Program-made: the position numbers and the translations under genes
The notes under the pieces: generated by a model
What the model saw: only the letters and a program-made list of their open reading frames with translations
Told to the model about the DNA's origin: nothing
The model's database searches: none
Virus record (IMG/VR): IMGVR_UViG_3300050120_000361
Location: 144,539 to 208,538 of that record
DNA: 64,000 bases
Reading direction: 5' to 3' (one strand)
Part shown: piece by piece, positions 11,117 through 63,186 of the stretch
How positions within the stretch are numbered: the first letter of the stretch is position 1
Layout: every line of letters begins with the position of its first letter

Positions 11117-11125
11117 ACTTAAGGG

Positions 11126-11170
11126 ATTTGACATATCTTTCATTTGGTTTCAGTCTCTTGCCTGAAACCA
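11126..11170 (+). promoter_or_regulatory. 3'-UTR element complementary to the tube gene's own start region, followed by a stem-loop
   Basis: ATTTGACATATCTTT (11126-11140) is the exact reverse complement of AAAGATATGTCAAAT (10523-10537); hairpin TGGTTTCAG-N8-CTGAAACCA at 11145-11170. Confidence 0.65.
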
Positions 11171-11187
11171 TTAAACATATACGGTAA

Positions 11188-12864
11188 ATGGCAAAATTCG
11201 GCTACGACGACCACAACTCGTCATTGAATACAAACACTCTGAAGCTCTCGAACGTCTACACGAACTGGGGATACCTTTTCCTGAACGCGGATGAGGAGTG
11301 CCGGGCCCTGATGCAGGAGCTCGTTGACGAGGAGCACGGCGGCTTCGTGCTCGTCAAGCCCCAGGACTTCGCCCTGCACATGCTAGACCTGTTCTTCAAC
11401 CTGTCGCCTGAGATACAGCCGCTTTTCGACGGCTACGACGCCATGCAGATAGCAGGAATGGAGCAGGTCTACAGGACCAATCCAAAGTCTATGGTAATGC
11501 GCCTGGCCGATGACCTAAGGGAGAACGAGTTCAACGGTTCGGGTCAGCGGTTCGCGGCTAACATTTACCCAATGACGCCTGAGGGCTTCTCTCAATGGCC
11601 GTCCGACTGGGCTTTTCCAATATACGTTGACGACAACATGCCAGGCGAAAATGCCGTGCATATCATAAACGAGGTGATGGAGTCCTCAGACCCTGAAGAG
11701 TACGAGGAGTACTACTGCTACGGCGGAGACTTTTTCTACAAGCGCAAGGACAGTCCTAAGTACTGGATGGACGAGGACGACGAGGCAGACGTGTCATTCG
11801 ATACAATCGAGGAGATGAAGCAGTACATCAACAACGGAGGGTGGGAGGGCACCCATGCGCCCGAACCGACCCCAGAGGTAGAGGAGGTTGCGAGCGACGT
11901 GGACGAGCTGCCGGAAGGTGAAAATGAAAGCATTTGGAGTGAAAAGCGTAAAGCATTTATTAAGATAGCCCGGAATGGAGAACCTGGAGTTTGGGATGAC
12001 GATCTAAATGTTTTTGTATTGACCGAAGAGTCAAAAAATGATACTGAGCCTGTTACAGCGGGAATAGTTGACAAGGCCTCTGAGGCCCAGCCTGAAATAA
12101 ACTGGTCCGACACAAAGACGGGGATTTCCGAAAAGGAGGAGTACAGCGCTCTTGTCAAGAAATTGGCTTTCGCCCAGCACAAGCTCGCCAAAACCAAGAA
12201 TTCCTACCGCAAGCCTACTCTTGGAGCGCCGCGGAAGGCCCCTGTGAAAATGGAGCAGTGGAAGAAGGACGCTTTGAAGCGCCTTGAAGGAGAGGTGTCC
12301 AAGGCGCTTAAGGCCATAGACCGCTTTAAGTTCAATCACGCCGGTTTGCGTCAGGTCATGAGACAGCTAAACATACCAGCAGCCTCTTGGAACGGAAGCG
12401 GGATGGTCAAGGAATGGGGCAATTGGACACAAGGCTACAAAATAAATGATGGCGGATGGTCGCCTGAGAAGGTTGACCTTTACCAGATAGGCAAGGAAAA
12501 ATTCCTGAACCTTATAAAGACGCTTGAGGCCAAGGGCTTTGAAATCGACGTTGTAAGCGAACCGAGCAAGGCTATAAACGGAGACAGTGTGGCATACTTC
12601 ACCATAGAGCAGTACCATACTGATGAGGATTTGAAGGGAAACACAAAATTGAATGAGGACGCGCCTGTAAGCCCTTGGGCTTTGGCGGTCGGTCCAGCAG
12701 TAGTGCTTTCTGTAGTGGTAGCCTCAGTGATAAGAGAGTACAAGAAAGGCAAGGCTAAGGCAGAGGCTGGAGGCGTTAAGATGGACGGGGCCACCCGCAA
12801 GAAGGTGCTAGTCAACGCGCTTCAAAAGGCGATACTCGAGGTGCAGAAGGCGCACAACTCATAA
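11188..12864 (+). CDS. KLSN-domain family protein 1 (mosaic, C-terminal TM helix)
   Basis: 'LKLSNVYTNW...LFDGYD' N-domain; module shared with 12870 gene; hydrophobic 'PWALAVGPAVVLSVVVASVI'. Confidence 0.7.
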   Translation: MAKFGYDDHNSSLNTNTLKLSNVYTNWGYLFLNADEECRALMQELVDEEHGGFVLVKPQDFALHMLDLFFNLSPEIQPLFDGYDAMQIAGMEQVYRTNPKSMVMRLADDLRENEFNGSGQRFAANIYPMTPEGFSQWPSDWAFPIYVDDNMPGENAVHIINEVMESSDPEEYEEYYCYGGDFFYKRKDSPKYWMDEDDEADVSFDTIEEMKQYINNGGWEGTHAPEPTPEVEEVASDVDELPEGENESIWSEKRKAFIKIARNGEPGVWDDDLNVFVLTEESKNDTEPVTAGIVDKASEAQPEINWSDTKTGISEKEEYSALVKKLAFAQHKLAKTKNSYRKPTLGAPRKAPVKMEQWKKDALKRLEGEVSKALKAIDRFKFNHAGLRQVMRQLNIPAASWNGSGMVKEWGNWTQGYKINDGGWSPEKVDLYQIGKEKFLNLIKTLEAKGFEIDVVSEPSKAINGDSVAYFTIEQYHTDEDLKGNTKLNEDAPVSPWALAVGPAVVLSVVVASVIREYKKGKAKAEAGGVKMDGATRKKVLVNALQKAILEVQKAHNS

Positions 12865-12869
12865 GCATT

Positions 12870-13727
12870 ATGGAAAGACTCAAACTAAGTAATTTCTGGG
12901 AAGTATGGCCCGAGCTATGCGCCACAGAACCCAAGTTCAAGCCTTTTGAAATGCTCGCGAACGTGTTCTCGACTTCGGACGGCAGGGCGATGCGGGCACA
13001 GCCGAAGGAGTGCACGGACTACCTGATGCGCATGTTCTCGAACTCGCAGCTTTTCAGGGGAATGTTCGGCGGCTACACGGAGCGGGAGGCCGACACCATT
13101 GCCGCAATGGTCGCGGAGAACGGGGACGGCTTCAAAGCGCTTTCAGAAAGGCTCGCCAAAACCTATGAGGCATGGACCGCGCTGGACGGGCCCAAGCGCA
13201 CTACGGACGAGGACTTCAAGAAGTACCTGATACTGGTGAATGAAACCAATATGGCGCAGGAGGCTTTTGACAGGATTAACGCCAAGGCGACCAATGAAAA
13301 GCTTCGCAAGGACCACGTGTTCGCATCCAAGTGGCGAGCCGCAAGGGCCGAAATCAACAAGGCAGAACGCAAAACGCGCCAATTCATTCACAACACCCTG
13401 AACATCGTTAAAGGCGTAAGGTCATTAGGCCTGGAGGCATCCAAGTCGGAAACCACAGCCGTAAAGGGCTGGCACACAATTACCGACGGTTACTCTATAT
13501 CCGAGGGCGATATAGAGCTGTACGGCGGCACGGGCGTGGAGAAGTATTCGGCTATACTGGCCTGGCTTAAGTCCAACGGATACGAGATAGAGTCGACTGA
13601 AAAGCCGTGGCGCTCAGGCAAGGGCATGCGCGCCAACATAAGAGTTAAGCCATGGCACGACGAGGACGCGCTGAAGGAGCGGCACAGGAAAACCGCGGAG
13701 AACATTGACAGATACATAAACGGTTAA
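12870..13727 (+). CDS. KLSN-domain family protein 2
   Basis: 'LKLSNFWEVW...MFGGYT' N-domain. Confidence 0.7.
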   Translation: MERLKLSNFWEVWPELCATEPKFKPFEMLANVFSTSDGRAMRAQPKECTDYLMRMFSNSQLFRGMFGGYTEREADTIAAMVAENGDGFKALSERLAKTYEAWTALDGPKRTTDEDFKKYLILVNETNMAQEAFDRINAKATNEKLRKDHVFASKWRAARAEINKAERKTRQFIHNTLNIVKGVRSLGLEASKSETTAVKGWHTITDGYSISEGDIELYGGTGVEKYSAILAWLKSNGYEIESTEKPWRSGKGMRANIRVKPWHDEDALKERHRKTAENIDRYING

Positions 13728-13755
13728 GGAACACGATACAACCAAAAACACAACA

Positions 13756-15348
13756 ATGGCATTCAAACTTACCAACATATGGCAGCAGTGGTCCCAGTTC
13801 TGGGCGGCAGCCGAAAAGGAGGCGCCCACAGACTTCGAGAGACTTTCCAATTATTGGCAGCCTGACGGCACATACATGACCGAGGAGCCTAAGGAGGCTG
13901 TTGAGGGCCTGCTAAAGCTGCTCGCCGCGAGCGGAAGGCTCATAAACGTATTTGACGGCTACGACCAGAAGGAAAAGGGCGGAATACTCGGCGCCTGGGC
14001 TGTCGAGGCCAACAGGCCCAAATTCATTGACGCCATATGCAAGTCTTTCGCCGATTACGTCCATATTAAGGGCAAGTCAATAGTAGACTACAGCCACGCT
14101 TTCGCCAACGGGTTCGCAGACGATTACGCGCAGTTCCCTGAGAACGTTACAGAAACCACAACTGGAGCGGATGACGGGAAGCGGTGCTTCACCGTTACAG
14201 GTCTTCCAGGCCTGACCTTCGAATTCGAGCAGAATGGTGAGCTCATAACCATAGTAGATGAGGTCGGTGACGATTTGGGGGACGCCTACGACAATGAGCT
14301 ATTCAACACGATAGCCGCCCTGCGCAGGGCGGTACACCCAGAGGACAATGATACGGGGAACCCTGAACTACTTAAGGAACTGAACGCAATACACGCGCAG
14401 CAGAAGCCGGTTCCGGTTCCGCCAAGCGCCGTGCCTGACAAGTCGTCATCGGCCGATAAGGTTGCTGACTACCTAGGAACGGCAATGGCCAAGCACAAGA
14501 ACTGCTACTTCGCCAAAATGAGCAAAGGCGTTCCACTGCCGGAAAGTTCGAGAATACCGGAAAGGATGCTCAAATGGGCGCTGTCCTGCTCGCTCCCTGA
14601 AAAGGGGGTTGATGACTTCAAAAAGGCTCTTAAGGCTATGGCGATACCCGGACTGCGCGTCAGCAAGGGGCCTTCCCGCGGGAAGAACGCTCCGGCGTAC
14701 TACGTTGTTCAGTGCCCGATTGAGGAGACCAAGGTTGAGGCGAAGACCGACGTGATACACCTGGCGTCATACTCTGAGGGTTGGAGCAGCCTCGGCGAAC
14801 AGGACATTGAATACTTCATGGACATATGCAGCCAGTTCCTCGCCGCCCCGGACAAAACAACTTTCTGGGACAGCCTGCGCTTCCAGATAACCAAGCTATT
14901 GCCGGGCGACGCTGAGGACATTGACCAGGCAGACATTGGTGAACGCATGGCCACAGTGAAGACCCTGCTCCAGTACCTCAAGAAGGACCTGGCCTGGGAC
15001 AAGAAGAACACCCGCGAGTACAACTCCAGGGCCAAGGCGATAGCTGACGGCAGCAAGGCCATATCCAAAATATCCGATGATGACATAGAGTACTTGGGAG
15101 ACGCCGACAGGCCGATACTTGTCAAGATACTTACCGACTACCACCTCGGAAACCTCATAGGCAAGGTGAAGCCGAAGTCGAAAATAGTGATAGAGGCCCG
15201 CGACTACACCGAAACCGACAACTCAAACAACAGGTACACGTTCACCAAGACATACGTTGACGGCTACGTGTCAATAGACGGTTCGGAGACTGAATTCGAA
15301 AGAATACAGATTGGCTCGAGCGGCTTCGACCACTTCCCCGAGAGCTGA
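13756..15348 (+). CDS. KLSN-domain family protein 3
   Basis: 'FKLTNIWQQW...VFDGYDQKEKGGI' N-domain. Confidence 0.7.
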   Translation: MAFKLTNIWQQWSQFWAAAEKEAPTDFERLSNYWQPDGTYMTEEPKEAVEGLLKLLAASGRLINVFDGYDQKEKGGILGAWAVEANRPKFIDAICKSFADYVHIKGKSIVDYSHAFANGFADDYAQFPENVTETTTGADDGKRCFTVTGLPGLTFEFEQNGELITIVDEVGDDLGDAYDNELFNTIAALRRAVHPEDNDTGNPELLKELNAIHAQQKPVPVPPSAVPDKSSSADKVADYLGTAMAKHKNCYFAKMSKGVPLPESSRIPERMLKWALSCSLPEKGVDDFKKALKAMAIPGLRVSKGPSRGKNAPAYYVVQCPIEETKVEAKTDVIHLASYSEGWSSLGEQDIEYFMDICSQFLAAPDKTTFWDSLRFQITKLLPGDAEDIDQADIGERMATVKTLLQYLKKDLAWDKKNTREYNSRAKAIADGSKAISKISDDDIEYLGDADRPILVKILTDYHLGNLIGKVKPKSKIVIEARDYTETDNSNNRYTFTKTYVDGYVSIDGSETEFERIQIGSSGFDHFPES

Positions 15349-15409
15349 TAGCGGAAAAAACGCAAAAGACAAAAACGCATAGATAGTTCATTACGCCGAA
15401 CAGACGACA

Positions 15410-15820
15410 ATGGCGATAAGGATAAGAGACAAGACACAAAAACCCGTTGATGCTGGGGTTAGCAGAAAAGACGACCGCAATGGCCAGTCGCAACCCACCA
15501 AAGAAACCAACAAGGACGCACCTATTCCGGATGTCCGTAGCTTCAGAGAACAGGCCATACTGGTCATTAACACACTCGAGTCGGAGGGCATAGACCTGTA
15601 CGACAAAGCAAGAACTCCAGGAATGTATTTGAAAAGGAGGGGGACCGCAATGGTGCCTGACCAACTAATTCAGAAAATTCTATCTGGGAACGACGACCAA
15701 GCATCGACTTTGAACGCGAAGCAGCCAACATCAACGGGAAACAATAGCGAGGCAAAGGCCGGCGGAGAGCAACTCCCGCCCGGCCTTGTCGCATTTCTGA
15801 CAAAGAACAAGAAACCATAA
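15410..15820 (+). CDS. hypothetical protein
   Basis: 136-aa ORF with ATAGATA motif 25 nt upstream. Confidence 0.6.
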   Translation: MAIRIRDKTQKPVDAGVSRKDDRNGQSQPTKETNKDAPIPDVRSFREQAILVINTLESEGIDLYDKARTPGMYLKRRGTAMVPDQLIQKILSGNDDQASTLNAKQPTSTGNNSEAKAGGEQLPPGLVAFLTKNKKP

Positions 15821-15833
15821 ATAACAGCATAAC

Positions 15834-16835
15834 ATGTCAACAGAGAAAGACGAAATCAAGAAGCAAAAACTGGCCGAGCTCGAACAGCTTGAAAGCACCG
15901 CCAAAGGAACCGAACCGGAAGCAGCGCCAATCGAAACCGAGACTCAGCCCGAGGACGAGGACGACAACATAGTGCGCATGGACGCTCCAAAAATGATTGA
16001 CGGCTACCGCATACTCGCAAGGCCGAACATGCCATTCGGCGGCGCGCTGTACCCGCCGTCTTGGACCTTCGCCTACAAGTGCCCAATTTCCAAGCAGATC
16101 GCGAACTTCTCCACGCTCAACGAGCAGGACCAGCCCGCGATAGTGGCTGCCATCGAGGAACTGGTTAAGGCCTGCTTCGTGATACTGGACGAGAACAACG
16201 GACAGACAATAGACACTGGCGAACTGAACGACGGCGACAGGCTGTTCTTCTTCCTGCTCCTGCGCGAATTTTACCTGCACGACAAGCCCATCACGTACAC
16301 CACAATAAGCCAGAACTGGCAGGAGCCCGTACAGGTAGAGCTGCTCGCCTCCAGGCTGAAGTACAAGACACTCAGCGCCGGCCTTCTCGCGTGCTTTGAC
16401 GGCCGCATATTCACGATACCGGTTAACGAAGAGTCCGAGCCGATAGTGTTCCGCGTCCCTACTTTCAAGGCTTCTGGCAAGGTGTTCCGGCACATAGTCA
16501 AGGTGTACCGAGACAGCCAGAACGCGGACGAGACAGAGAGCAAGAAGATGCTTGACGACGAGTCGTTCAACAAGCAGTTCCTGCTGGTGGCGCCGTTCCT
16601 TTTCGTTACCGGCAACGAGACAATAGACGCCCTCAAGACCAAGTTCAAGAAGATACAGTACAATGAGGACCTACTCAACAGCTACCTCACGGTGATAAAC
16701 AAGCTCAAACTGGACAACATGGAGCGCATCGCCTACACGTACAAGGGCTCTGAGGAGGAGACCCTGATGCGATTTCCCGGAGGATGGAAGAACATGTTTA
16801 TCGATAACCAGGCTTTCGGAGGAATATTCGACTAA
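15834..16835 (+). CDS. baseplate hub/tail assembly chaperone (T4 gp26-like)
   Basis: 'GELNDGDRLFFFLLLRE' resembles the gp26-family 'L...D..Y.FL.LR' motif; 'IVFRVPT'. Confidence 0.65.
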   Translation: MSTEKDEIKKQKLAELEQLESTAKGTEPEAAPIETETQPEDEDDNIVRMDAPKMIDGYRILARPNMPFGGALYPPSWTFAYKCPISKQIANFSTLNEQDQPAIVAAIEELVKACFVILDENNGQTIDTGELNDGDRLFFFLLLREFYLHDKPITYTTISQNWQEPVQVELLASRLKYKTLSAGLLACFDGRIFTIPVNEESEPIVFRVPTFKASGKVFRHIVKVYRDSQNADETESKKMLDDESFNKQFLLVAPFLFVTGNETIDALKTKFKKIQYNEDLLNSYLTVINKLKLDNMERIAYTYKGSEEETLMRFPGGWKNMFIDNQAFGGIFD

Positions 16836-16836
16836 G

Positions 16837-17187
16837 ATATGGGGGCCGAAGGAGGAAAAGAAGACAGCATTCCCTACCTGGTCTGAACTCTACTCGGCGA
16901 GCAAAATCGACTGGAACAGCTACTACGAGTCGGCTATAATACTGTCCGTAAAGAGCCACAACAGCTTTGAGCAGATAGAGAACCTGGAGTTCTTTAAGTT
17001 CAATTTGCTGATGAAGTACCTGAATATATACATAGAGAACGAGAACAAACAGCAACAAAGCCCCGAAGACGCCGAAAACAAGAAGGACGAACTAATGCAG
17101 CAGTCCGCCAAGCACATGGCGGAAGCCAAGAAGAATATGCCGAAAGCGCCTAAGATGCCGACAATAAAAGCACCAAAACTGAAGTAA
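16837..17187 (+). CDS. gp51-like tail/baseplate assembly protein; start uncertain (non-canonical start or frameshift)
   Basis: Frame open from 16768; 'IDWNSYYESAIILSVKSHNSFEQIENLEFFKFNLLMKYLNIYIENENK' resembles T4-like gp51 'DL.NYY..NF.L..HHKYS..EIENM'; this similarity begins well upstream of the first TTG/ATG (17005/17011). Confidence 0.6.
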   Translation: MWGPKEEKKTAFPTWSELYSASKIDWNSYYESAIILSVKSHNSFEQIENLEFFKFNLLMKYLNIYIENENKQQQSPEDAENKKDELMQQSAKHMAEAKKNMPKAPKMPTIKAPKLK

Positions 17188-17197
17188 AAACACGGAA

Positions 17198-19027: not shown

Positions 19028-19037
19028 ACAAAATCAG

Positions 19038-24914: not shown

Positions 24915-24944
24915 CGGCATTAAATTGGTTTAGTTTAATTAGTT

Positions 24945-24992
24945 CCAGCATTCAGAATGCCCCGTCGCCGAAAGGTGTCGGGGCTTTGCTGG
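24945..24992 (+). terminator. long GAAA-tetraloop stem-loop
   Basis: CCAGCA..GCCCCGTCGCC-GAAA-GGTGTCGGGGC..TGCTGG; no classical U-tract. Confidence 0.55.
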
Positions 24993-52242: not shown

Positions 52243-52263
52243 GTTGTTATTGATTAAGTTAAT

Positions 52264-52297
52264 GAAACCCAACATCGTAAAGTGTTGGGTTTCTTTC
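52264..52297 (+). terminator. rho-independent terminator after capsid gene
   Basis: GAAACCCAACA-N8-TGTTGGGTTTC followed by TTTC. Confidence 0.85.
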
Positions 52298-52322: not shown

Positions 52323-52349
52323 CATATCATACAAAACAAATATGATATG
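52323..52349 (+). promoter_or_regulatory. hairpin sequestering the HNH start codon
   Basis: CATATCATA-N9-TATGATATG, 9-bp perfect stem including ATG 52347. Confidence 0.6.
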
Positions 52350-53693: not shown

Positions 53694-53723
53694 ATATATC
53701 GGATAACTTTAAAATAACATACA

Positions 53724-55249: not shown

Positions 55250-55770
55250 TGCTGAGCGACAAGGATTTGGCCGCCGAGAGGAGCGCGGACAGGGGCTTCG
55301 GCTACGTGAACGACACGTACATAAACCTGTACAGGGACGACAATCCGATACTGGAGGAGGGCGACGAGTGCTGGTTCCTGTTCAATTCAGCGGACAACTA
55401 CCACATAATGTGCATAGGGCGCGGAACCGTTGTAAGGGACTGGTTCACTGACGGCCTCAACAAGCTGTACTGCATCAGGCTCGATGAGGTGTGCGAGACC
55501 CCGGCCTTCTGCGCCAGGTACGTGTGGGGCAGGGAGTACTTCATGGTTAACCGCCCAGACGACAAGGAAAAGAAGATACCCAGGCTGTACCACATAACTG
55601 AGAACACTTCAGAGGCGTTCCTCGCCGAGAACTTCTTCAAGGTGGAGTGCTTTTTCGTGCGGAAGACGGTCGAGGCCGTGCTGAAGCTGCGCAGGGAGTA
55701 CACCATAACCGTGTACGAGGACACGCGGCGCATGATGGCTGAAATGGAGGAAATCATAACCAACGAATAG
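55249..55770 (+). CDS. hypothetical protein
   Basis: Translationally coupled (TGATG overlap). Confidence 0.6.
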   Translation: MLSDKDLAAERSADRGFGYVNDTYINLYRDDNPILEEGDECWFLFNSADNYHIMCIGRGTVVRDWFTDGLNKLYCIRLDEVCETPAFCARYVWGREYFMVNRPDDKEKKIPRLYHITENTSEAFLAENFFKVECFFVRKTVEAVLKLRREYTITVYEDTRRMMAEMEEIITNE

Positions 55771-55781
55771 AATAGATAGGT

Positions 55782-57371
55782 ATGGCAAAGACAAGAGCGG
55801 ACAACGTCGAACAGGTGCCCTACGTCAAATCGACTGGGAACATAGCGGTGCCGAAGGGCGCGAACAAGGACCTGATAAACAAGGGGGACGTTTACGGGTC
55901 CCTTGCTAACAAGCTGCACCTGATAAAACTGGCCAACAATTACCCGGCCGCAGACACGGACTACAACAAGAACAATGACGAGCGCTTCGTGCCGAAGACG
56001 TTCACCGACCTGTGCCGCTCATCCGATGAGAACAAGGGCGCCGTGCAGTACGAGATTGACGACTTCCTGTACACCAAGAACCTCGGCTTCCCGATAAACA
56101 AGATGGTCACGCTGCGCCGGTTCCCTTACCCGTGCACGGACAACATATACGACAAGTTCAACCAGGCAGAGCCCGATATAGCGAGGATGGTCACGTACTT
56201 CGACCAGGACGTAAACAAGCTTGAGGACCTGCTGGCGTTCTCCTACAGCATGAAGTGGAAGGAGCTGACCGCGGACATGGAGCAGGGGAGCGCCATAGGC
56301 CCGCAGTCCGGGTTCACCGGCTGGATGGCCAAGACCATGGCGATAATAGACCCTTCTCTTTCGTCTCAGACCCTGAAGGGCGAGAACGCCATGAACTACG
56401 ACCCCAAGCACGACCAAAACAAGGTTTTCGGGCCGGTCGACTCTCTGAACATGACGCACATACGCGACGTGGGCCTGGAGTTCAACAAGGAATTCGACGT
56501 CACCTTCGAGTACGAGATGCGCTCAATAGGCGGCAGGACCGGCGAGTTCGCTTTCAAGGACATCATCGCCAACGTGCTCGCGGTCACATACAACAACGCC
56601 AAGTTCTGGCCCGGCTCGCGGTACTGGGTGGGCGAGCGCCCTTCCAAGTTCCTTGAGAAGTTCCGGTTCCTAAGCCCCGAGACGACCGACGACTTCCTGA
56701 CAAAGGGCTACGGGGAGCTGAAGAGCGCCCTCTCCGGCTTCAAGAACGGCGGTACGGCCATTGAGGCTCTAAAGTCCGCCATGCAGTCCGGACTCAACTT
56801 CGCGCTCGGCAAGCTCCTGGACAAGGTTGGGCGTCCATCCATACTGGTAATGAACTCGCTGCTCAGCGGCGAGCCCGTTGGCGGATGGCACCTAATGATA
56901 GGCAATCCGGACAACCCCATAATGTGCATAGGCAACCTCATATGCACCGGGACCGACATCAGCTTCCCGACCGACGCGCTCGGGTACGGCGACTTCCCAA
57001 CCAAGCTGATGGTAAAGGTGAAGCTCAAGCCCGGAATGCCCAAGGACAAGGCCGGCATTGAGACGATGTTCAATATGGGCAAGCAGCGGATATACTACAA
57101 CCCGCTCACGGTCAGCAAGCAGACCAACAGCACCAAAATAGCGACACACTCGCGCAAGTTCATGGGCTTTGACGACGCCTCAATAAAGGAGACCCTAAAG
57201 GAGACCTTCGACTTCGTTGCGCAGGACGTGCAGGTGGTTACGGACACGGTCGTGAACGGCGTGCAGTCACTTAGCGCTGCCGTGAGCATACCGCAACAGG
57301 ACAACAACACGGCGAACTACGACACCGCCGCCTCCAATGCGGTTCCACTCGGCTTCGGAAATGTGGCGTAA
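55782..57371 (+). CDS. probable baseplate tail-tube cap-like protein (gp48-type)
   Basis: 'R..GLEF.KEF.VTFEYE.R', 'IGNP.NPIM.IGNLIC....I.F...FPT.L.V.V.L' tube-fold pattern. Confidence 0.45.
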   Translation: MAKTRADNVEQVPYVKSTGNIAVPKGANKDLINKGDVYGSLANKLHLIKLANNYPAADTDYNKNNDERFVPKTFTDLCRSSDENKGAVQYEIDDFLYTKNLGFPINKMVTLRRFPYPCTDNIYDKFNQAEPDIARMVTYFDQDVNKLEDLLAFSYSMKWKELTADMEQGSAIGPQSGFTGWMAKTMAIIDPSLSSQTLKGENAMNYDPKHDQNKVFGPVDSLNMTHIRDVGLEFNKEFDVTFEYEMRSIGGRTGEFAFKDIIANVLAVTYNNAKFWPGSRYWVGERPSKFLEKFRFLSPETTDDFLTKGYGELKSALSGFKNGGTAIEALKSAMQSGLNFALGKLLDKVGRPSILVMNSLLSGEPVGGWHLMIGNPDNPIMCIGNLICTGTDISFPTDALGYGDFPTKLMVKVKLKPGMPKDKAGIETMFNMGKQRIYYNPLTVSKQTNSTKIATHSRKFMGFDDASIKETLKETFDFVAQDVQVVTDTVVNGVQSLSAAVSIPQQDNNTANYDTAASNAVPLGFGNVA

Positions 57372-57398
57372 TAGATACAGGACAGTACAGTAAAGGCA

Positions 57399-57536
57399 TT
57401 CATTTCAGGATTGGCAAGAAGCAATCCTATTGCAACATTTTCAAATAAATTGCATATTAAGCGGATTTTTGCCTATATTACAGTATAATAAATAAATGCT
57501 AACTAACACTTAAAAACAAACCAATCCTGAAATGAA
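57399..57536 (+). promoter_or_regulatory. 16-bp inverted repeat pairing with the sigma start codon, with a competing local hairpin
   Basis: TTCATTTCAGGATTGG (57399-414) / CCAATCCTGAAATGAA (57521-536, ATG at 57532); alternative AGGATTG/CAATCCT (57407-428). Confidence 0.7.
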
Positions 57537-59523
57537 CAACGTACCAACCCTGGAAGAGGAGCTCGCCCGGTCCGAAGCAAAAGAGGCCGCGGTGGCCCTG
57601 AGAAACAAGAAGAAAGACGAAGACGCCAAGGAAGCAGCTCGAGGCAAGCTGGACCCTGACCGAACGTCCGCAGACAGGCTCATGAGCGACGCCAACTCCA
57701 AGCTCAACTACTACATGAAGAAGGCGCCACAGTTCCAGATACTGCAAAGCCAGATAGAGACCATTAAGGCCGAGCGCGAACAGTACAAAAAGAGCGGCAA
57801 CAAGGAGGGGTTGGACAAATGCGAAACACTGCTTCTGGAACTATCGGAAAAGAGAACGCGCATACGCAGCATCTTCAAGACGGGCAACGACAGCGGCAAC
57901 GAGAAGAAGCGCGAGGAGCTCTATGAGAAGTTCAAGAACTCCGAAGAGCTTCAGGGACTGCTAAAGGAGCAGAAGGACCTCGTGGAGGAAATCAAGTCGA
58001 AGACACCCAACATCCTCGCGGCGCGCGTGACGCAGTTCCGCAAGGACATCGAGCTCCACAACGGAGTGGCCGGCACGGCAATAGAGGACCTTGACACGAT
58101 ACTGGACAGCAACAAGAAGCTCGTCATAGCCTCTGAGCTTGAGCAGGACTACTACGACTACTGCGGAAAGATAGGCGAGATAATCGACTGCCACGCCGGT
58201 GAGGTCATGGAGATGAACGCGAACAAGATACTTCAGGAGCTCAAGCGCGTTCTCGAGGACACCCAGCACCTCAAGGACAAGCTTTCGGAGAACAAGATGA
58301 AGGTGGCGTCCGTCCGCGAGAACATCGCTCAGGGAACGAACTTAACAGACCTGGTATTCGAGATATTCGATTTCGCCTCCCCAGACGAGGAGGGCGACGC
58401 TCCCCGCGAGATAATAGCATCAGCCAACATCCCGTTGGTAAAGTCAATCTGCTACAACCTGTGCAGCAAGCTCGGACAGCAGTCAAAGATGCCCGACGCG
58501 ATAAGCTACGGCCTGCTGGGGCTCACCGTGGCAATCAACAAATGGTATTCTATCCAGAAGATGTCTGACAGCGCCCTGTCATTCAAGGGGTTCGCGAACT
58601 CCTACATAGCGGGAGCGGTGCAGAGGGGCCTCCTTGAGCTTAAGGGGTCCGGCACCATTTCGGGGTCCAGCCTCGCGACAATGGACACCATGAACAAGAA
58701 GAAAATCGAGAACTTCGTCAAATACAACCCCGAGTTCGAGGACATGGACAAGAAGATACTGTCCGACATGCTCGCGGGCTACGACGACACCGTGCAGCCA
58801 TTGAACATGGTTTCAGAGTCCGACTACACCGCCACAGTTGGAGGCGAGGACGGCGACGGCGCGGACATCTGGGCTTCCGCGATAAAGGACAGCATGAAGG
58901 TAGACGACCACGTGGAGGCCAAGATCGAGTACGAGCGCCTTCTGTCTTCCATAAGCGAACTGCTCAACATGTTCGCCACCAAGAAGGATGCCAAGACCGG
59001 CATAAAATCGATAACCCAAAAGAAGCTTTTCGACAAGTACGACCGCAAACTGTTCATGATGTACTTCGGACTGGAGTACAAGCGCCAGAAGGTAGGCGTC
59101 ACCCCGGGCTCGGAAGCAAACAACGCGTACACCCAGGCCGAAATGGGCGAGGAGCTCGCGGCGATGTACGCCGCGGACGGCATACAGAAGACGTTCTCAC
59201 AGGCGTCCCTTTCAGGCAAGGACGGACGCATAGCGGTACTGCTGAACAAGATAAAGTGGGCCGTTCTCGAAAACCCAAAAATGAAGGCAGGCTTCGAGTT
59301 CCTTTACCACTACTGGAAGGACAACGGCGCCAAACTGAACGAATTCAGCAACAGCCGCGAGGAGATAGGGATGAAGCTGGACCGCGACGAGCTGCGCCAG
59401 ATATACCATGACAACGGCTCAGAGCTGAACAGGCAGCTCAGTGACGGCAAGCGACTGAGCGACGTGTTCGAGATTTCAAAGGACAACCCGCTGGACAAGG
59501 ACATCGCCGGACTGTTCAGGTAG
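57532..59523 (+). CDS. phage-encoded RpoD/sigma70-like factor with long coiled-coil N-terminus
   Basis: Region 2-like 'IIASANIPLVKSIC...DAISYGLLGLTVAINKW...SFKGFANSYI.GAVQR'; region 4-like 'DRKLFMMYFGL...YTQAEMGEEL'. Confidence 0.75.
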   Translation: MNNVPTLEEELARSEAKEAAVALRNKKKDEDAKEAARGKLDPDRTSADRLMSDANSKLNYYMKKAPQFQILQSQIETIKAEREQYKKSGNKEGLDKCETLLLELSEKRTRIRSIFKTGNDSGNEKKREELYEKFKNSEELQGLLKEQKDLVEEIKSKTPNILAARVTQFRKDIELHNGVAGTAIEDLDTILDSNKKLVIASELEQDYYDYCGKIGEIIDCHAGEVMEMNANKILQELKRVLEDTQHLKDKLSENKMKVASVRENIAQGTNLTDLVFEIFDFASPDEEGDAPREIIASANIPLVKSICYNLCSKLGQQSKMPDAISYGLLGLTVAINKWYSIQKMSDSALSFKGFANSYIAGAVQRGLLELKGSGTISGSSLATMDTMNKKKIENFVKYNPEFEDMDKKILSDMLAGYDDTVQPLNMVSESDYTATVGGEDGDGADIWASAIKDSMKVDDHVEAKIEYERLLSSISELLNMFATKKDAKTGIKSITQKKLFDKYDRKLFMMYFGLEYKRQKVGVTPGSEANNAYTQAEMGEELAAMYAADGIQKTFSQASLSGKDGRIAVLLNKIKWAVLENPKMKAGFEFLYHYWKDNGAKLNEFSNSREEIGMKLDRDELRQIYHDNGSELNRQLSDGKRLSDVFEISKDNPLDKDIAGLFR

Positions 59524-59544
59524 GAAAAAACGCACAATACAGGA

Positions 59545-59580
59545 CAGGGGTCGTTGGGTATATAAGCCTAACGGCCCCTG
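59545..59580 (+). terminator. stem-loop after sigma gene
   Basis: CAGGGGTCGTTGGG-TATATAAG-CCTAACGGCCCCTG (with G-U pairs). Confidence 0.55.
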
Positions 59581-59602
59581 ACCAATTTAACACGAACAAG
59601 AC

Positions 59603-60244
59603 ATGAATATAAGGAAATACGAAGAGCACCAGGACACGCAACTCTTTGAGAGCGAGGACTTCTCGCACCTGACCGAAAAGGATTTGAAGGACTTCCTTAA
59701 GAACTTCCCGGACAATGCGACATCATGGAAGGACGCTACCGGCGAGCCTGGCGAGATGCGCAAGTGGCTCTGCGAGACATTGGAGCTGGATTACAAGCCG
59801 ACACCCAACAGCAGCCCGTCCGTCCTGAACAAGGCCAATAAGAAGGGCATCATGGACATGTTCCCCAAGCTGGACGCTCAGCAGAAGAAGAACTTTTTCG
59901 AGCAGTACGGCCACTGGATGGAGGCTCCTCTCTTCGAGAGCGACGCGTCAATGGACAACCACGAAGAGGCCGCCATAGAGGACGTGCTTGACACCAAGGG
60001 CAAGCAGTTCGACTTCGAGAACGGCGCCGCCATGGCCAACCTGCTCTCAAGCGTGGACACGCAGTTCGGCCTGTTGTGGCATGACGCAAAGACACAGGAC
60101 TGGCCCGGATTTGTTGCGTCAGTGCGCGAGTTCCTCAGGACCGCGGAGATAGACATGACAGGGGCCGACGAGGCCGCCCTCGAGCTGCACTACAACAAGT
60201 ACAACTGGCGCGCGAAGCTTGCCAAACAGAAGCTGAAAAACTAA
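59603..60244 (+). CDS. hypothetical protein, probable head-internal (two LFES motifs)
   Basis: 'MNIRKYEE....LFES' start reminiscent of T4 internal-protein targeting N-termini. Confidence 0.55.
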   Translation: MNIRKYEEHQDTQLFESEDFSHLTEKDLKDFLKNFPDNATSWKDATGEPGEMRKWLCETLELDYKPTPNSSPSVLNKANKKGIMDMFPKLDAQQKKNFFEQYGHWMEAPLFESDASMDNHEEAAIEDVLDTKGKQFDFENGAAMANLLSSVDTQFGLLWHDAKTQDWPGFVASVREFLRTAEIDMTGADEAALELHYNKYNWRAKLAKQKLKN

Positions 60245-60245
60245 C

Positions 60246-60764
60246 ATGAGCAACGTAACAGTACCGCCAAAGACCCCCGAGGAAATCGAGGAGTTCCTCG
60301 AGCTTCCGGACATCACGGTAAACCCCTCGAAGAGCGCGCAGGCGTTCAAGACCAACCTGCTGCTGTTCGACGGCAATTTCACCGGCATAGTGGTGTTCCT
60401 GAACAACCTCACGTCATTCGTGAAGTACTTCTACACCCTGATAGACCTGTCCGCAATAGTGCAGCAGGTGATAGACGCGCTTGGCTCGAGCAAGGACACC
60501 ATACCGATACTGACCACTTCCAACATAGGGACCTTCACGCTGACCAACATCGGACAGAACATCTACAAGCTGATGCGCACGGACGCATACACGCTCGTGC
60601 TGACCAGGACAAACCAGCCGACATGGGACACCTCGAAGCTGATGTGCCAGGTCAAGCAGATTGACGGCACCTTCGTGTACCCGGTGATAAGGACGGCAAA
60701 CAACAACGTGACGATAAGCTTCGCGGACGCGATAGCCACAAACTACAACATATACCTACTGTAA
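60246..60764 (+). CDS. putative virion structural protein
   Basis: Beta-rich C-terminus 'YPVI...NNNVTISF......YNIYLL'. Confidence 0.5.
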   Translation: MSNVTVPPKTPEEIEEFLELPDITVNPSKSAQAFKTNLLLFDGNFTGIVVFLNNLTSFVKYFYTLIDLSAIVQQVIDALGSSKDTIPILTTSNIGTFTLTNIGQNIYKLMRTDAYTLVLTRTNQPTWDTSKLMCQVKQIDGTFVYPVIRTANNNVTISFADAIATNYNIYLL

Positions 60765-60775
60765 AAACAGAAATA

Positions 60776-61744
60776 ATGGAAAGTAACCAAGACCCAACAG
60801 TAATTAAACTTCTTCGGCGCTTAAGGTCGAATATACTCGTTGGAACCGAAAAGCACGGAACCGCCGCGAGAATATTCTTTGACGGGTGGGACCAGAAGGC
60901 AGCGTTTTCGCTGGCTGCCGACAGAAAGGATTACCTGACTTGCCTTTCTCTGCTTCTGATGCAGTTCGCAAGCAATCCAGGAATGGACATAACCAGCCTG
61001 TTCAACACTGATATTCAGGAACTTGCTGAGGCGTGCGGACACGTTGGTGTTCTGTACGATGTTACCGGCAAAAGGATGATAGCGCGCGTAATGTACGAAC
61101 CAGACTGCTTTGAACCGGGCAATCAGCCAAGCGGTCAGTGCGATAAGTTCGATTTGACCGGGTCAGTAACCACAAGCTGGTTCGGCGGGGCGGTGAACCC
61201 GAACGCAGAGGAACTGGAATACGAAGTGGGACAGAAATTCCACAACAATAGCAACGACAAAGAACTCGAAATACTTGAAATCAACGGTATTGACGACTAC
61301 GGTATAGGAACTGTTGGTGAGCCGAAGAACATCAAGACTTTTGGTTGGATGTCGGAAGAGGAGCTTCAACAGTGGGTGCGCCGCGGGGTGTACTCTCCAA
61401 TAACGGATGATGAGACTGAAGATGAAGGTCTGGACGGTTCCATTGAAGACAGGGGACCCGAGGCCAACGCAACACCTGCGGACTACGTATTCCTGTGCAA
61501 CGGATGGAACGTCAATGTGACGAAATCAACGCTTTTAAGGAACACCAAAAAGAAAATGTATTGGGACTTTACAGCATACGACGGACCGAACAGGACCATT
61601 GAAGGTACCGTAATAACCGAAGAGAATGTGCACAGTGGGGATTGGGAAATCGAGGATATTGACTTCAACTACGAGGATGAGCAACTGATATTGAACGCTG
61701 ATGGCGATATGTGGGAAACATTCGCCACTGGAATGGAACTGTAA
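60776..61744 (+). CDS. acidic hypothetical protein, possible divergent KLSN-family member
   Basis: 'RLRSNI...IFFDGWDQK' vs 'VFDGYDQK' in the 13756 gene. Confidence 0.55.
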   Translation: MESNQDPTVIKLLRRLRSNILVGTEKHGTAARIFFDGWDQKAAFSLAADRKDYLTCLSLLLMQFASNPGMDITSLFNTDIQELAEACGHVGVLYDVTGKRMIARVMYEPDCFEPGNQPSGQCDKFDLTGSVTTSWFGGAVNPNAEELEYEVGQKFHNNSNDKELEILEINGIDDYGIGTVGEPKNIKTFGWMSEEELQQWVRRGVYSPITDDETEDEGLDGSIEDRGPEANATPADYVFLCNGWNVNVTKSTLLRNTKKKMYWDFTAYDGPNRTIEGTVITEENVHSGDWEIEDIDFNYEDEQLILNADGDMWETFATGMEL

Positions 61745-61772
61745 AGATATTGATAAATGATGGTAATGATTA

Positions 61773-61802
61773 AAGGCCTGAAGCGAATTCGCTTCAGGCC
61801 TT
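61773..61802. terminator. perfect 30-bp palindrome at the convergence of the + and - gene blocks (probable bidirectional terminator)
   Basis: AAGGCCTGAAGCGAATTCGCTTCAGGCCTT. Confidence 0.75.
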
Positions 61803-61813
61803 ACTTGTTTTAC

Positions 61814-62083
61814 TTATCTGTCAACAAATGACCTGTTGACCCTTTCGAGCTGGAGTATTCTGAAGAGAATGTGGAAATCCCAAGTGGTCTTGTTTGCCCA
61901 GTCGTTCCTGTTGCTTAGCCCCAAAAGCGCCCTTGACTTGCCGTAGGATATGCTTGTTGTCCTGCTTATTCTCAGCGTTTCAATCTTAAGCAACCATATG
62001 CCTTCCGCTCTGAATGAAACGGAAAGCAGTGAAATCTTTGACAGGACGAGTCTGTACTGATGCTTCGGGTACCTACTGCTCAT
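61814..62083 (-). CDS. small hypothetical protein
   Basis: Part of a tightly packed minus-strand run. Confidence 0.45.
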   Translation of the reverse strand: MSSRYPKHQYRLVLSKISLLSVSFRAEGIWLLKIETLRISRTTSISYGKSRALLGLSNRNDWANKTTWDFHILFRILQLERVNRSFVDR

Positions 62084-62369
62084 GGAGGTAAAGGTTGATT
62101 ATCCTGACAATCATTATCACATCAGCAACATAAGCCTTGTCTTCGAATATCTGAAACATTTCGTTGCACATGTTTTCAAGCTCATCTTCGGTCCAAGTGC
62201 CCGCTGGACGCATTTCCTGGGTTTCCGTCCTGTGCTTCATGTGCCTCATGCCCTCGTAAACAGAGGCTACGGCTACAGCCAAATCAGCAGAGTCATTAAG
62301 CTCTTTAGATAAGTGGTCGCCAAGCAGACGTAGCTCCCGTTTCGGTGTGCCGTCGGCCATACTACTCAT
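62073..62369 (-). CDS. small hypothetical protein
   Basis: Overlapping run of minus-strand ORFs. Confidence 0.55.
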   Translation of the reverse strand: MSSMADGTPKRELRLLGDHLSKELNDSADLAVAVASVYEGMRHMKHRTETQEMRPAGTWTEDELENMCNEMFQIFEDKAYVADVIMIVRIINLYLHEQ

Positions 62370-62706
62370 CGCTACCGCCCTCCCCGTCTCTGCCGCTCGC
62401 GTCGCCCAATTGCATAAGCGCCTGGTGCAGCTTCGAGTTATGTATGGCGAATGAGTATATGTCCACGCCTATCACCTCCGACCCGTACTGCGAGAAGAAG
62501 GCGAAGGACTGCTTCATCAGAGTGTTGTATTGACCGCAGTCCTCATCGCTGAACGACTGCTCGCCTGTTTCGTTGTTTACGTAGTTCTCGAACCTCTCGT
62601 CGGGGTGCCAAGACACCATAGCGGTTTCCTCGAGCCACACGAAGAACTCCCGAATGTCCTCGAGGGTCATAATCTGTGTTTTGGCGAATTTCTGTTGTAT
62701 GTTCAT
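62362..62706 (-). CDS. small acidic hypothetical protein
   Basis: 'I.TLEDIREFF.WL....WHPDE.FENYVN'; A-rich leader. Confidence 0.65.
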   Translation of the reverse strand: MNIQQKFAKTQIMTLEDIREFFVWLEETAMVSWHPDERFENYVNNETGEQSFSDEDCGQYNTLMKQSFAFFSQYGSEVIGVDIYSFAIHNSKLHQALMQLGDASGRDGEGGSDE

Positions 62707-62724
62707 GTCTTTAGATTTGTTTAA

Positions 62725-63060
62725 CTATTGGTTGACGCACTCCCACTGCTTCATTATGCCATGGCAGTCGTAGTGGAGTATGGCGTTAATGGAAATAGGC
62801 TCGCGCCTGTCCTCAGTTCCGTTTCCGCTGTAGAAGACCACTGACATGCCACCGCCGAACCTACCGCGAACCCTGAACGGTTCCTCGTATTTGGCCCATT
62901 CCCTGTCAAGCAGTTCCATGAGGCGCATGGTCTCCGCGAACGTCAGCCATGGAACCACCGCCTCCTCTGACGGGTCGTGGTAGCCCCTGAACTGCGAAGC
63001 CTCCATGTCATCCCAATAGAATTGGTTTGGGCGCAGTTTTTTCAATTTTTCATTGTCCAT
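62725..63060 (-). CDS. small hypothetical protein
   Basis: 111-aa ORF with A-rich leader. Confidence 0.6.
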   Translation of the reverse strand: MDNEKLKKLRPNQFYWDDMEASQFRGYHDPSEEAVVPWLTFAETMRLMELLDREWAKYEEPFRVRGRFGGGMSVVFYSGNGTEDRREPISINAILHYDCHGIMKQWECVNQ

Positions 63061-63064
63061 TTGC

Positions 63065-63150
63065 TGATTGATTAATTCGTTTGTTTCTCAACTCGAAAAG
63101 GGCCGAACGCTTTCGCGAAGGCCCTAATCTTCAGAAACAAACCGCAATCA
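63065..63150 (-). promoter_or_regulatory. extended nested stem-loop (terminator-like core with GAAA loop) whose outer arms pair with the 63060 leader
   Basis: TGATTG/CAATCA, GTTTGTTTCT/AGAAACAAAC, AGGGCC/GGCCCT, CGC-GAAA-GCG. Confidence 0.55.
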
Positions 63151-63186
63151 TGAAATCGCGTGTCTTAATAAAATGAACTGTTATGG

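What the first reader, a model, noticed from the sequence alone, without database searches (positions are those of the whole stretch)
11117..63186. Recurrent 'stop codon - anti-start tract - hairpin' architecture
Seen: several transcript ends carry a U/G-rich tract, often containing CAT, that reads as the reverse complement of this phage's A/C-rich leaders plus ATG, directly before a stem-loop: 11126-50, 24915-44 (reverse complement AACTAATTAAACTAAACCAATTTAATGCC; 8-bp TTAAATTG/CAATTTAA match to its own gene's leader), 52243-63, 57399-414 and, on the minus strand, 63132-55 (reads CAGAAACAAACCGCAATCATGAAA on +). Other ends (9131, 29329, 31840) lack it. Inference: a possible family of 3'UTR-derived anti-initiation RNAs. 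With no Shine-Dalgarno pairing, leader accessibility would be the main lever on translation.
Basis: partly seen in the sequence, partly recalled or inferred. Interest (0 to 1): 0.7.

Follow-up and report, generated by a model that had tools for sequence, protein, structure and literature searches.

The report
Start-codon-masking inverted repeats in phage
Two of the five tracts are exact inverted copies of a nearby start codon on the same transcript, so they probably silence that gene by folding back on it, while the proposed family of free-acting anti-start RNAs is not supported.

Summary
The window is the last 64 kb of a 208.5-kb circularly assembled jumbo myovirus from peat metagenomes. Its leaders are A-rich and lack Shine-Dalgarno motifs. 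The five tracts exist at the stated coordinates, but they are not one class.

- **w57399-57414:** a perfect 16-nt inverted copy of the start region of the next gene (w57521-57536), which is a probable sigma factor. A promoter-like box conserved in six of the seven relatives read (weaker in the seventh, L024) lies between the two arms.
- **w11126-11140:** a perfect 15-nt inverted copy of the start region of its own gene, the tail tube gene, 588 nt upstream.
- Both helices are predicted to form with probability near 1 and cut start-site accessibility to 0.21. Both are extreme outliers among 87 gene ends (z -7.9 and -6.65). Neither occurs in the 23 related loci read.
- **w63132-55:** the outer arm of an extended terminator stem, and an inverted copy of an early-gene leader module.
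- **w24915-44 and w52243-63:** no complementarity beyond chance.

Start regions carry no excess of antisense matches genome-wide. CAT is not enriched after stop codons, and T+G content of the spacers forms a continuum.

Best reading is cis start-codon sequestration, like T4 gene e or hok fold-back, arisen recently in this lineage. Function is untested because no RNA run was listed.

The parts
10523..10537 (+). 5' arm AAAGATATGTCAAAT; covers the ATG (w10529) of the tail tube gene
   Evidence: Perfect 15-nt inverted repeat with w11126-11140. Only one ATG candidate for this start.
10529..11116 (+). Tail tube protein gene (195 aa)
   Evidence: AlphaFold model pTM 0.69. Foldseek top hits are phage and contractile-injection-system tail tubes, E 4e-6. 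phrog_32623. More than 200 homologues.
11126..11140 (+). 3' arm ATTTGACATATCTTT, starting 10 nt after the tube stop codon; anti-start tract against its own gene
   Evidence: Duplex -19.7 to -21.9 kcal/mol. z -6.65 against shuffles, 0 of 200 shuffles as good. Pair probabilities about 1.0 in the 721-nt fold. Start region unpaired probability 0.52 without the arm and 0.21 with it. Absent from 16 related loci.
11146..11169 (+). 8-bp hairpin GGTTTCAG/CTGAAACC with no U-tract after it
   Evidence: fold; sequence.
24915..24944 (+). T-rich spacer after gene w23421-24914; not a significant anti-start tract
   Evidence: 8-nt match to own leader reached by 46 of 1000 shuffles. Relative L025 keeps the leader but not the tract. 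No effect on accessibility of the w25010 start.
24945..24992 (+). Terminator-like hairpin (CCCCGTCGCC/GGTGTCGGGG inside CCAGCA/TGCTGG)
   Evidence: fold, -36.1 kcal/mol, z -2.7.
52243..52263 (+). AT-rich spacer at the 5' edge of a low-GC island carrying an HNH endonuclease gene; no start complement
   Evidence: GC 0.425 in w52001-54000. z -0.14 (own start) and -1.13 (next start). No accessibility effect.
52264..52293 (+). 12-bp terminator hairpin followed by a T-run
52323..52349 (+). Local 9-bp hairpin CATATCATA/TATGATATG that holds the HNH start codon (w52347)
   Evidence: Start region unpaired probability 0.44 with the hairpin's 5' arm and 0.80 without it. HNH families, E 4e-65.
57399..57414 (+). 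5' arm TTCATTTCAGGATTGG, 27 nt after the stop of gene w55782-57371; anti-start tract against the next gene
   Evidence: Perfect 16-nt inverted repeat, loop 106 nt. Duplex -25.1 kcal/mol, z -7.9. Single outlier among 228 genes, next best 10 nt. Absent from 7 related loci.
57407..57428 (+). Local hairpin AGGATTG/CAATCCT that shares its 5' arm with the anti-start tract; no U-tract follows
   Evidence: Best stem-loop found in this spacer, about -9.5 kcal/mol; the scan places it slightly differently from these by-eye coordinates. Mutually exclusive with the 16-bp helix by sequence.
57438..57481 (+). Promoter-like box between the arms: TTTTCAAATAAAT ... TTGCCTATATTAC
   Evidence: Nucleotide blocks conserved in all five relatives aligned (58-73% protein identity), C-TATATT invariant. 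A sixth, L019, has an intergenic region identical to L018. The seventh, L024 (47%), keeps only a weaker CATCTATATTAG form. The box is unique in the genome.
57521..57536 (+). 3' arm CCAATCCTGAAATGAA; leader plus ATG of gene w57532
   Evidence: The leader AAAYCAATCC..GAAATG is conserved in relatives. Unpaired probability 0.81 for a transcript starting after the box and 0.21 for a read-through transcript.
57532..59523 (+). Probable divergent sigma-70-family factor (663 aa)
   Evidence: Atlas feature hits to phage sigma clusters, 0.94. Family profile hits FliA region 2, E 4.4e-4. Foldseek hits are almost all sigma chains of RNA polymerase holoenzymes, prob up to 0.96. Pfam reaches E 0.025 in only 3 of 25 members.
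63132..63155 (-). Tract UUUCAUGAUUGCGGUUUGUUUCUG; its GUUUGUUUCU pairs with AGAAACAAAC (w63079-63088 on the minus strand) in the next gene's leader, around the terminator hairpin
   Evidence: MFE -44.1 kcal/mol, z -4.9 for w63045-63190(-). Tract against leader -16.1 kcal/mol, z -2.2; against start codon regions not significant. No accessibility effect. The + strand reads as an early leader module.
63100..63124 (-). Terminator hairpin GGGCC..GGCCC followed by UUUUCG on the minus strand

Best explanation
The five tracts are heterogeneous. Two are cis-acting anti-start sequences: exact inverted copies of a start-codon region on the same transcript.

**(a) Sigma-factor locus.** w57399-57414 lies upstream of a promoter-like box conserved in six of the seven relatives read, and pairs over 16 bp with the leader and AUG of the next gene, a probable sigma factor.
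- Transcripts reading through from the upstream gene carry both arms, so their start site is closed.
- Transcripts starting at the gene's own promoter lack the 5' arm, so their start site is open.
- Eight free nucleotides of the arm (UUCAUUUC) could act as a toehold to displace the small local hairpin that shares the rest of the arm.

**(b) Tail tube locus.** w11126-11140 sits 10 nt after the tail-tube stop codon and pairs over 15 bp with the tube gene's own start. Once the cistron is fully transcribed, the mRNA can fold back and limit further initiation.

**The rest.** The third tract (w63132-55) is the outer arm of an extended terminator stem and a reversed copy of an early leader module. 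The last two are ordinary T-rich spacers, one at the edge of a homing-endonuclease island.

**Shown:** the repeats, their positions, their statistical rarity, the predicted pairing, and their absence from relatives.
**Inferred:** that transcripts span both arms, that the box is a promoter, and that pairing lowers translation.
For: - **Perfect repeats at start codons.** Repeats of 16 and 15 nt each have one arm on an annotated start and the other 10-27 nt after a stop.
- **Rarity.** Block-shuffled genomes give 0.37 such repeats of at least 15 nt per genome. An arm covers a start in about 3% of positions, which is my arithmetic from 229 starts in 208.5 kb.
- **Outliers.** z -7.9 and -6.65 among 87 gene ends whose z distribution is otherwise null, mean about 0 and sd about 1.1.
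- **Predicted pairing.** Pair probabilities are near 1. Accessibility drops 0.81 to 0.21 (sigma-factor gene) and 0.52 to 0.21 (tube gene).
- **Promoter-like box.** It lies between the arms, is conserved in six of seven relatives (a weaker form in L024), and is unique in the genome.
- **Structure-sensitive initiation.** Leaders are SD-less and A-rich, and structure tunes initiation in Bacteroidia (PMC6847099).
- **Precedent.** T4 genes e, soc, 49 and I-TevI are silenced in long transcripts by a helix over the start site and released by a late promoter inside it (PMC3014915). hok mRNA is locked by a long-distance 5'-3' (tac/fbi) stem (PMC9841398).
- **Sequence confirmed** in three independent metagenome assemblies.
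Against: - Neither arm is found in any of 23 related loci, at 47-86% protein identity. That leaves no covariation and no sign of long-term selection.
- About 95 kb of relatives' DNA holds no comparable repeat on a genuine start.
- Perfect identity with no mismatch also fits a very recent, possibly neutral, inverted duplication.
- By count alone, two repeats of at least 15 nt is only p about 0.05. The significance rests on their positions.
- No RNA run was listed, so transcript boundaries, read-through and the promoter are unverified.
- Repressing a highly needed tail tube gene is not an obvious benefit.
- Ribosome traffic may keep a 588-nt-range helix from forming.
Confidence: 0.5

Rival explanations
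1. Neutral footprints of recent DNA events. The 15- and 16-nt inverted copies arose by template switching or illegitimate recombination in variable intergenic spots and have no regulatory role. The RNA pairing is a side effect.
For: The arms are perfect and lineage-specific. All 23 related loci lack them. The regions downstream of the tube gene and upstream of the box are variable among relatives. The genome also holds reversed copies of leader modules elsewhere. This recalls the promoter/stem-loop cassettes that mediate shuffling in T4-type phages (PMC2839356).
Against: Two independent events both copied exactly a start-codon region and both landed just after a stop codon on the same strand within 600 nt. 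Under random placement this is very unlikely, since about 3% of positions put an arm on a start. Once present, a 15-16-bp helix over an SD-less start can hardly be without effect (PMC6847099).
Confidence: 0.28
2. RNA processing or stability elements. The long-range duplexes are cut by a double-strand-specific RNase, or they protect the ends. They would excise or stabilise the tube cistron and separate the sigma-factor message from the upstream one.
For: The duplexes flank a whole cistron (tube) or an intercistronic region. The 5'-3' closed form of hok mRNA is described as strongly stabilised (PMC9841398). From my own knowledge, rRNA and some phage mRNAs are processed at long-range stems.
Against: 15-16 bp is short for RNase III substrates (own knowledge). 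There are no data on RNA ends. The helices are centred on the AUG, which a processing site does not need. They are not conserved.
Confidence: 0.1
3. The tracts are seeds of stable 3'UTR-derived small RNAs that pair in trans with many A/C-rich leaders and block initiation.
For: The tracts are T/G-rich and lie before stem-loops. A processed fragment carrying w11126-11140 or w57399-57414 could in principle also act on its partner in trans. The reverse complement of w63132-55 resembles the early leader family.
Against: No preference for start regions over coding-sequence controls or shuffles. No excess of antisense matches at starts. The anti-leader motif is not recurrent in 3' regions. CAT is not enriched. 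The tracts are not conserved. No Rfam family matches. The only strong partners lie on the same transcript.
Confidence: 0.06
4. Starts on the opposite strand. The reversed leader-plus-ATG copies drive small antisense ORFs: 21 codons from w11134 and 28 codons from w57403.
For: On the minus strand both copies have an A-rich upstream context and an ATG followed by a short open frame.
Against: The ORFs are 21 and 28 codons and overlap the 3' ends of sense genes. They have no homologues to test and lie antisense to a long unidirectional gene block.
Confidence: 0.04

Closest known systems
T4 genes e (lysozyme), soc, 49 and I-TevI: start site hidden in a helix in long early transcripts, released in transcripts from a late promoter inside the helix region (PMC3014915)
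   Same: At w57399/w57521 an upstream sequence pairs with the initiation region of the next gene. A promoter-like element lies downstream of the 5' arm, so only read-through RNA would be silenced.
   Different: - The helix is centred on the AUG and an SD-less leader, not on a Shine-Dalgarno site.
- The loop is 106 nt rather than a compact hairpin.
- The promoter is unverified.
- The helix is not conserved in relatives, whereas T4-type phages share theirs.
- The regulated gene is a probable sigma factor.
[quoted passage not shown]
   Same: At w10523/w11126 a 3'UTR element just after the stop codon pairs with the 5' initiation region of the same cistron across the whole ORF.
   Different: - The gene is a tail tube protein, not a toxin.
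- There is no antisense partner RNA.
- In hok, the Shine-Dalgarno site is hidden indirectly through rearrangements. Here the AUG itself is in the helix.
- No evidence of 3' processing.
Hairpins over the start sites of free-standing homing endonuclease genes (Aeh1 mobE, T4 segB; PMC3014915)
   Same: The HNH gene at w52347 has its AUG in a local 9-bp hairpin.
   Different: This is a separate local hairpin (w52323-52349).
PeSL promoter/stem-loop cassettes of T4-type phages (PMC2839356, PMC4122927)
   Same: Repeated 'hairpin + leader + ATG' modules flank small early genes on both strands. One reversed copy gives the w63132-55 tract.
   Different: Only three or four copies were seen. No promoter was identified in them and no evidence of shuffling was gathered. 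The resemblance is a lead, not a test.
3'UTR-derived trans-acting small RNAs of enterobacteria (recalled from memory: CpxQ, SroC, DapZ)
   Same: Position after a stop codon and before a terminator hairpin.
   Different: No multi-target seed, no conservation and no RNA evidence.

Membership tests
T4 gene e-type start-site sequestration | The initiation region (start codon, with or without SD) is base-paired in the longer transcript | tested here: met
   In silico only. 16-bp perfect helix; unpaired probability 0.21 in read-through RNA.
T4 gene e-type start-site sequestration | A promoter lies downstream of the 5' arm, so the short transcript lacks it and is translatable | tested here: inconclusive
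   A conserved, genome-unique box lies between the arms. Accessibility is 0.81 for RNA starting after it. No transcription start data. The box does not match sigma-70 or Bacteroidetes consensus by eye.
T4 gene e-type start-site sequestration | The structure is shared by related phages | tested here: not met
   Seven related loci keep the leader and a form of the box (weakest in L024) but lack the 5' arm.
T4 gene e-type start-site sequestration | Measured difference in translation between long and short transcripts | not testable with these tools
   Needs reporters or ribosome profiling.
hok-type fold-back inhibition (tac/fbi) | A 3' end element pairs with the 5' end of the same mRNA over a long distance | tested here: met
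   In silico. 15 nt, 588 nt apart, pair probability about 1.
hok-type fold-back inhibition (tac/fbi) | 3' processing removes the inhibitory element and activates translation | not testable with these tools
   No RNA run listed.
hok-type fold-back inhibition (tac/fbi) | Part of a type I toxin-antitoxin locus with an antisense RNA | tested here: not met
   The gene has a tail tube fold. No Rfam antitoxin RNA in the window.
Trans-acting 3'UTR-derived small RNA | Seed complementarity to several targets at start sites, beyond chance | tested here: not met
Trans-acting 3'UTR-derived small RNA | Seed conserved in relatives | tested here: not met
Trans-acting 3'UTR-derived small RNA | A stable small RNA accumulates from the 3' end | not testable with these tools
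   No RNA run was listed.
Intrinsic terminator | GC-rich hairpin directly followed by a U-tract | tested here: inconclusive
   Met at w52264-52293, w63100-63124(-) and, weakly, w24945-24992. Not met at w11146-11169 or w57407-57428. Whether U-tracts are required in this host is unknown.

The most novel reading that the evidence does not exclude
An SD-less jumbo phage times or caps translation with start-codon-centred 'anti-AUG' sequences placed in the preceding 3'UTR. One makes the tail tube mRNA close on itself after it is fully transcribed, a self-limiting message. The other makes a phage sigma factor translatable only from its private promoter. Both would have been invented recently by inverted copying of the start region. 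That would show how such switches are born.
Probability: 0.2. Interest if true: 0.6.

Novelty: new variant of a known kind. Interest (0 to 1): 0.35.

Why it matters
Bacteroidia-type translation ignores Shine-Dalgarno pairing, so structure around the AUG is the main intrinsic control. Almost nothing is known about how phages of such hosts exploit this.

If the two helices work, they are clean, minimal examples of start-codon masking in such a system. One gates a phage sigma factor by transcript origin. The other folds a structural mRNA back on its own start.

Their absence from relatives would also catch a regulatory helix at birth. The practical lesson for the scan is that T/G-rich post-stop tracts are mostly noise. 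Exact inverted copies of nearby start regions can be found by a simple genome-wide test.

Tried and rejected
- **Trans targeting.** RNAduplex of each tract against 228 start regions, 523 coding-sequence controls and 30 shuffles found no preference except the two cis partners (the first attempt, timed out).
- **Antisense 12-mers to starts against internal ATGs.** No excess.
- **Anti-leader motif TGTTATY in 3' regions.** Only 2 copies.
- **Relatives for covariation.**
  - Single-protein scans of viral contigs found nothing.
  - A megablast of w23000-33000 against the phage collection found nothing.
  - A tblastn of the w57532 protein against phages found nothing.
  - The tube protein found only distant PAU and Tenacibaculum jumbo phages.
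  - A profile scan gave 12 loci, and exact look-ups gave 12 more that were used in the tests. None carried the arms.
  - Two closest contigs had no retrievable DNA.
  - A DNA pattern scan of metagenome contigs returned one unrelated coding hit.
- **RNA evidence.** No RNA run was listed. The DNA runs show only identical sequence, plus one low-coverage relative whose letters could not be read.
- **The box TTGCCTATATTAC as a repeated phage promoter.** It is unique in the genome.
- **Sigma-70 promoter and terminator consensus scan of w1-20000.** No more hits than shuffles.
- **Rfam.** No family in the window. No tRNAs.
- **Accessibility tests for the starts at w25010, w11188, w52347 and w63060.** The tracts change nothing.
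- **Small antisense ORFs.** Only 21 and 28 codons.
- **Pfam and PHROG scans of neighbouring genes.** Mostly empty.

Full report
**Context.** The window is bases 144539-208538 of a single 208,538-bp contig.
- The contig ends overlap by 127 nt, so the assembly is circular.
- GC is 0.53, and about half the genome is transcribed leftward and half rightward.
- The window carries a tail sheath gene and a gene with a tail tube fold. Distant relatives are the jumbo phages PAU and Tenacibaculum pT24/PTm1.
- The DNA comes from peat metagenomes.
- Upstream regions of 186 genes are A-rich (up to 0.55 at -14 to -11) and G-poor. AGGAG occurs in 6 of 186. This is the Bacteroidia pattern, in which initiation is tuned by mRNA structure and a few upstream adenines (PMC6847099). 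The host is therefore probably a Bacteroidota member. That is an inference.

**Checking the observation.**
- Most rightward intergenic regions are A/C-rich, so these tracts do catch the eye.
- Over all stop-to-hairpin spacers in the genome, however, T+G runs continuously from 0.15 to 0.75.
- CAT is present in 31 of 88 post-stop spacers against 30.5 +/- 4.2 in shuffles.

**What stands out: two exact inverted repeats on start codons.**

A search for the longest exact complement between each start region and its upstream 240 nt gave 5-8 nt for nearly all 228 genes. It gave 16 nt for gene w57532.

A genome-wide inverted-repeat scan then showed two long-range perfect repeats of at least 15 nt:

| 5' arm | 3' arm | Length | Loop | Position |
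|---|---|---|---|---|
| w57399-57414 | w57521-57536 | 16 nt | 106 nt | 5' arm 27 nt after a stop; 3' arm on the start of the next gene |
| w10523-10537 | w11126-11140 | 15 nt | 588 nt | 5' arm on the tail tube start; 3' arm 10 nt after the tube stop |

- In both, one arm is centred on an annotated ATG and the other sits shortly after a stop codon on the same strand.
- Sixty block-shuffled genomes give on average 0.37 repeats of at least 15 nt and 0.17 of at least 16 nt at loop 31-3000. Five percent of shuffles have two or more. The count alone is therefore marginal.
- The placement is what is improbable. An arm contains a start ATG at about 1.4% of positions, by my arithmetic.
- In an energy-based scan of 87 gene ends against their own and the next start region, the z-scores are null-like. 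The exceptions are these two (-7.9 and -6.65) and two sites outside the window.
- One of those outside sites, at genome 8455/8563, is another long-range stem over a start codon. It is built from a repeated CCGGTGCGC motif.

**Predicted behaviour.**
- **Tail tube locus.** In the 721-nt fold around the tube gene, the 15-bp helix has pair probabilities of about 1. It lowers the mean unpaired probability of the start region from 0.52 to 0.21.
- **Sigma-factor locus.** For gene w57532 the value is 0.81 for RNA beginning after the promoter-like box and 0.21 for RNA coming from upstream.
- **Local hairpin.** The 5' arm at w57399 overlaps a small local hairpin (w57407-57428, about -9.5 kcal/mol). The 16-bp helix (-25.1 kcal/mol) excludes that hairpin. 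Eight nucleotides of the arm remain free as a possible toehold, which is an inference.
- **The other three tracts** change nothing in the accessibility of the neighbouring starts.

**Relatives.**
- **Tail tube gene.** The tube protein has more than 200 homologues. Sixteen loci at 63-86% identity were read, and none has a complement of its start after the stop. The genes downstream of it vary.
- **Gene w57532.**
  - The gene has 28 homologues, and seven loci at 47-73% identity were read.
  - Six keep the intergenic block TTTTCAAATAAAT ... TGCCTATATTA; L024 keeps only a weaker form of the box.
  - All seven keep the A-rich leader. Six keep its AAAYCAATCC..GAAATG form and L024 ends differently.
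  - None has the 5' arm.
  - The box is unique in this genome.
  - The conserved box is good evidence for a private regulatory region, probably a promoter. The anti-start arm is a recent addition of this lineage.
- **Tract w24915-44.** The one relative read keeps the leader but has an ordinary terminator and no complement.
- **Sequence support.** Contigs from three peat runs are identical across both repeats, so these are not assembly artefacts.

**The trans hypothesis.**
- The tracts do not bind start regions better than coding controls or shuffled tracts, apart from their cis partner.
- Start codons carry no more antisense 12-mers elsewhere in the genome than internal ATGs do.
- The reverse complement of the strong leader motif RATAACA is nearly absent from 3' regions.
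- No Rfam family matches, and no RNA run was listed.

**The other three tracts.**
- **w63132-55 (minus strand).**
  - Its GUUUGUUUCU pairs with AGAAACAAAC in the leader of the next gene, around a canonical terminator hairpin.
  - Tract against leader gives z -2.2; against start codon regions the result is not significant.
  - On the + strand the same DNA reads hairpin + AGAAACAAAC + ATCATGAAA. That module precedes early genes at genome 2114(-) and 5185(-) and recurs reversed at 2758(+).
  - It recalls the PeSL cassettes of T4-type phages (PMC2839356).
- **w52243-63.** It is the AT-rich edge of a low-GC island with an HNH endonuclease gene. That gene's start sits in its own 9-bp hairpin, as described for other phage homing endonucleases (PMC3014915).
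- **w24915-44.** It has only a chance-level 8-mer.

**Interpretation.**
- The best-supported reading is cis start-codon sequestration.
- The sigma-factor locus follows the logic of T4 genes e, soc, 49 and I-TevI (PMC3014915). Read-through RNA is silent and promoter-proximal RNA is active.
- The identification of w57532 as a sigma-70-family factor rests on four weak but concordant lines.
- The tube locus resembles the 5'-3' fold-back of hok mRNA (PMC9841398), without the toxin context.
- The main rival is that both repeats are neutral products of recent inverted duplication. Their perfection and their absence from relatives fit that reading. Their precise placement does not.
- I put the functional cis reading at about 0.5, the neutral reading at about 0.3, and the trans family at about 0.06.

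**Verdict.** The kind of mechanism is known. The SD-less, AUG-centred form, and the fold-back of a 3'UTR onto its own start in a structural gene, are variants worth a modest follow-up.

Noticed in passing
window-wide, e.g. w5589, w26565-26585, w32917-32926, w36080, w43505: The motif RATAACA, often in tandem 9-10 nt apart, lies within 60 nt upstream of a same-strand start in 39 of its 70 genome copies. It could be a translation-enhancing leader element or a phage promoter piece.
   Followed up: partly
w57532-59523 and w57438-57481: A 663-aa protein with weak but concordant sigma-70-family signals. It is preceded by an intergenic box that is conserved at the nucleotide level in relatives of 58-73% protein identity (weaker at 47%) and is unique in this genome.
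   Followed up: partly
w52243-53700: A low-GC island (0.425) with an HNH homing-endonuclease gene. Its start codon sits in a local 9-bp hairpin (w52323-52349). It is probably a mobile insertion after gene w50368-52242.
   Followed up: partly
genome 5700-8700 (outside the window): The motif CCGGTGCGC and its complement recur on both strands. One copy right after a stop codon forms a long-range stem over the start at genome 8563 (z -5.1). It may be an operator-like repeat or a third cis anti-start element.
   Followed up: partly
genome 2114-2139(-), 2758(+), 5185-5209(-); w63090-63155(+): Repeated 'hairpin + AAGAAACRAAAC + ATCATGA' modules lie before small early genes. Some are reversed and followed only by tiny ORFs. 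They resemble the shuffling cassettes of T4-type phages (PMC2839356).
   Followed up: partly
w61773-61802: A perfect 15+15-nt palindrome AAGGCCTGAAGCGAA|TTCGCTTCAGGCCTT lies between the convergent rightward and leftward gene blocks. It is a likely bidirectional terminator.
   Followed up: no
w23166-23420: An unusually long (255 nt) intergenic region lies before gene w23421-24914. Its last part, TTAACAATTTAA, is conserved in a relative of 71% protein identity.
   Followed up: no
w57235-57405, run X1: A low-coverage relative in the source sample matches at about 83-86% identity. It has 151 unrelated letters in place of w57235-57405, so homology resumes inside the anti-start arm. Its letters could not be read.
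   Followed up: no
contig ends (genome 1-127 and 208412-208538; w63874-64000): The first 127 nt repeat exactly at the contig end. This is the signature of a circular assembly at k=127, not a proven terminal repeat.
   Followed up: yes
w9155-9185, w59545-59582: Strong hairpins after rightward genes have an A-run before the stem and no U-run after it. On the + strand they are not canonical intrinsic terminators.
   Followed up: no
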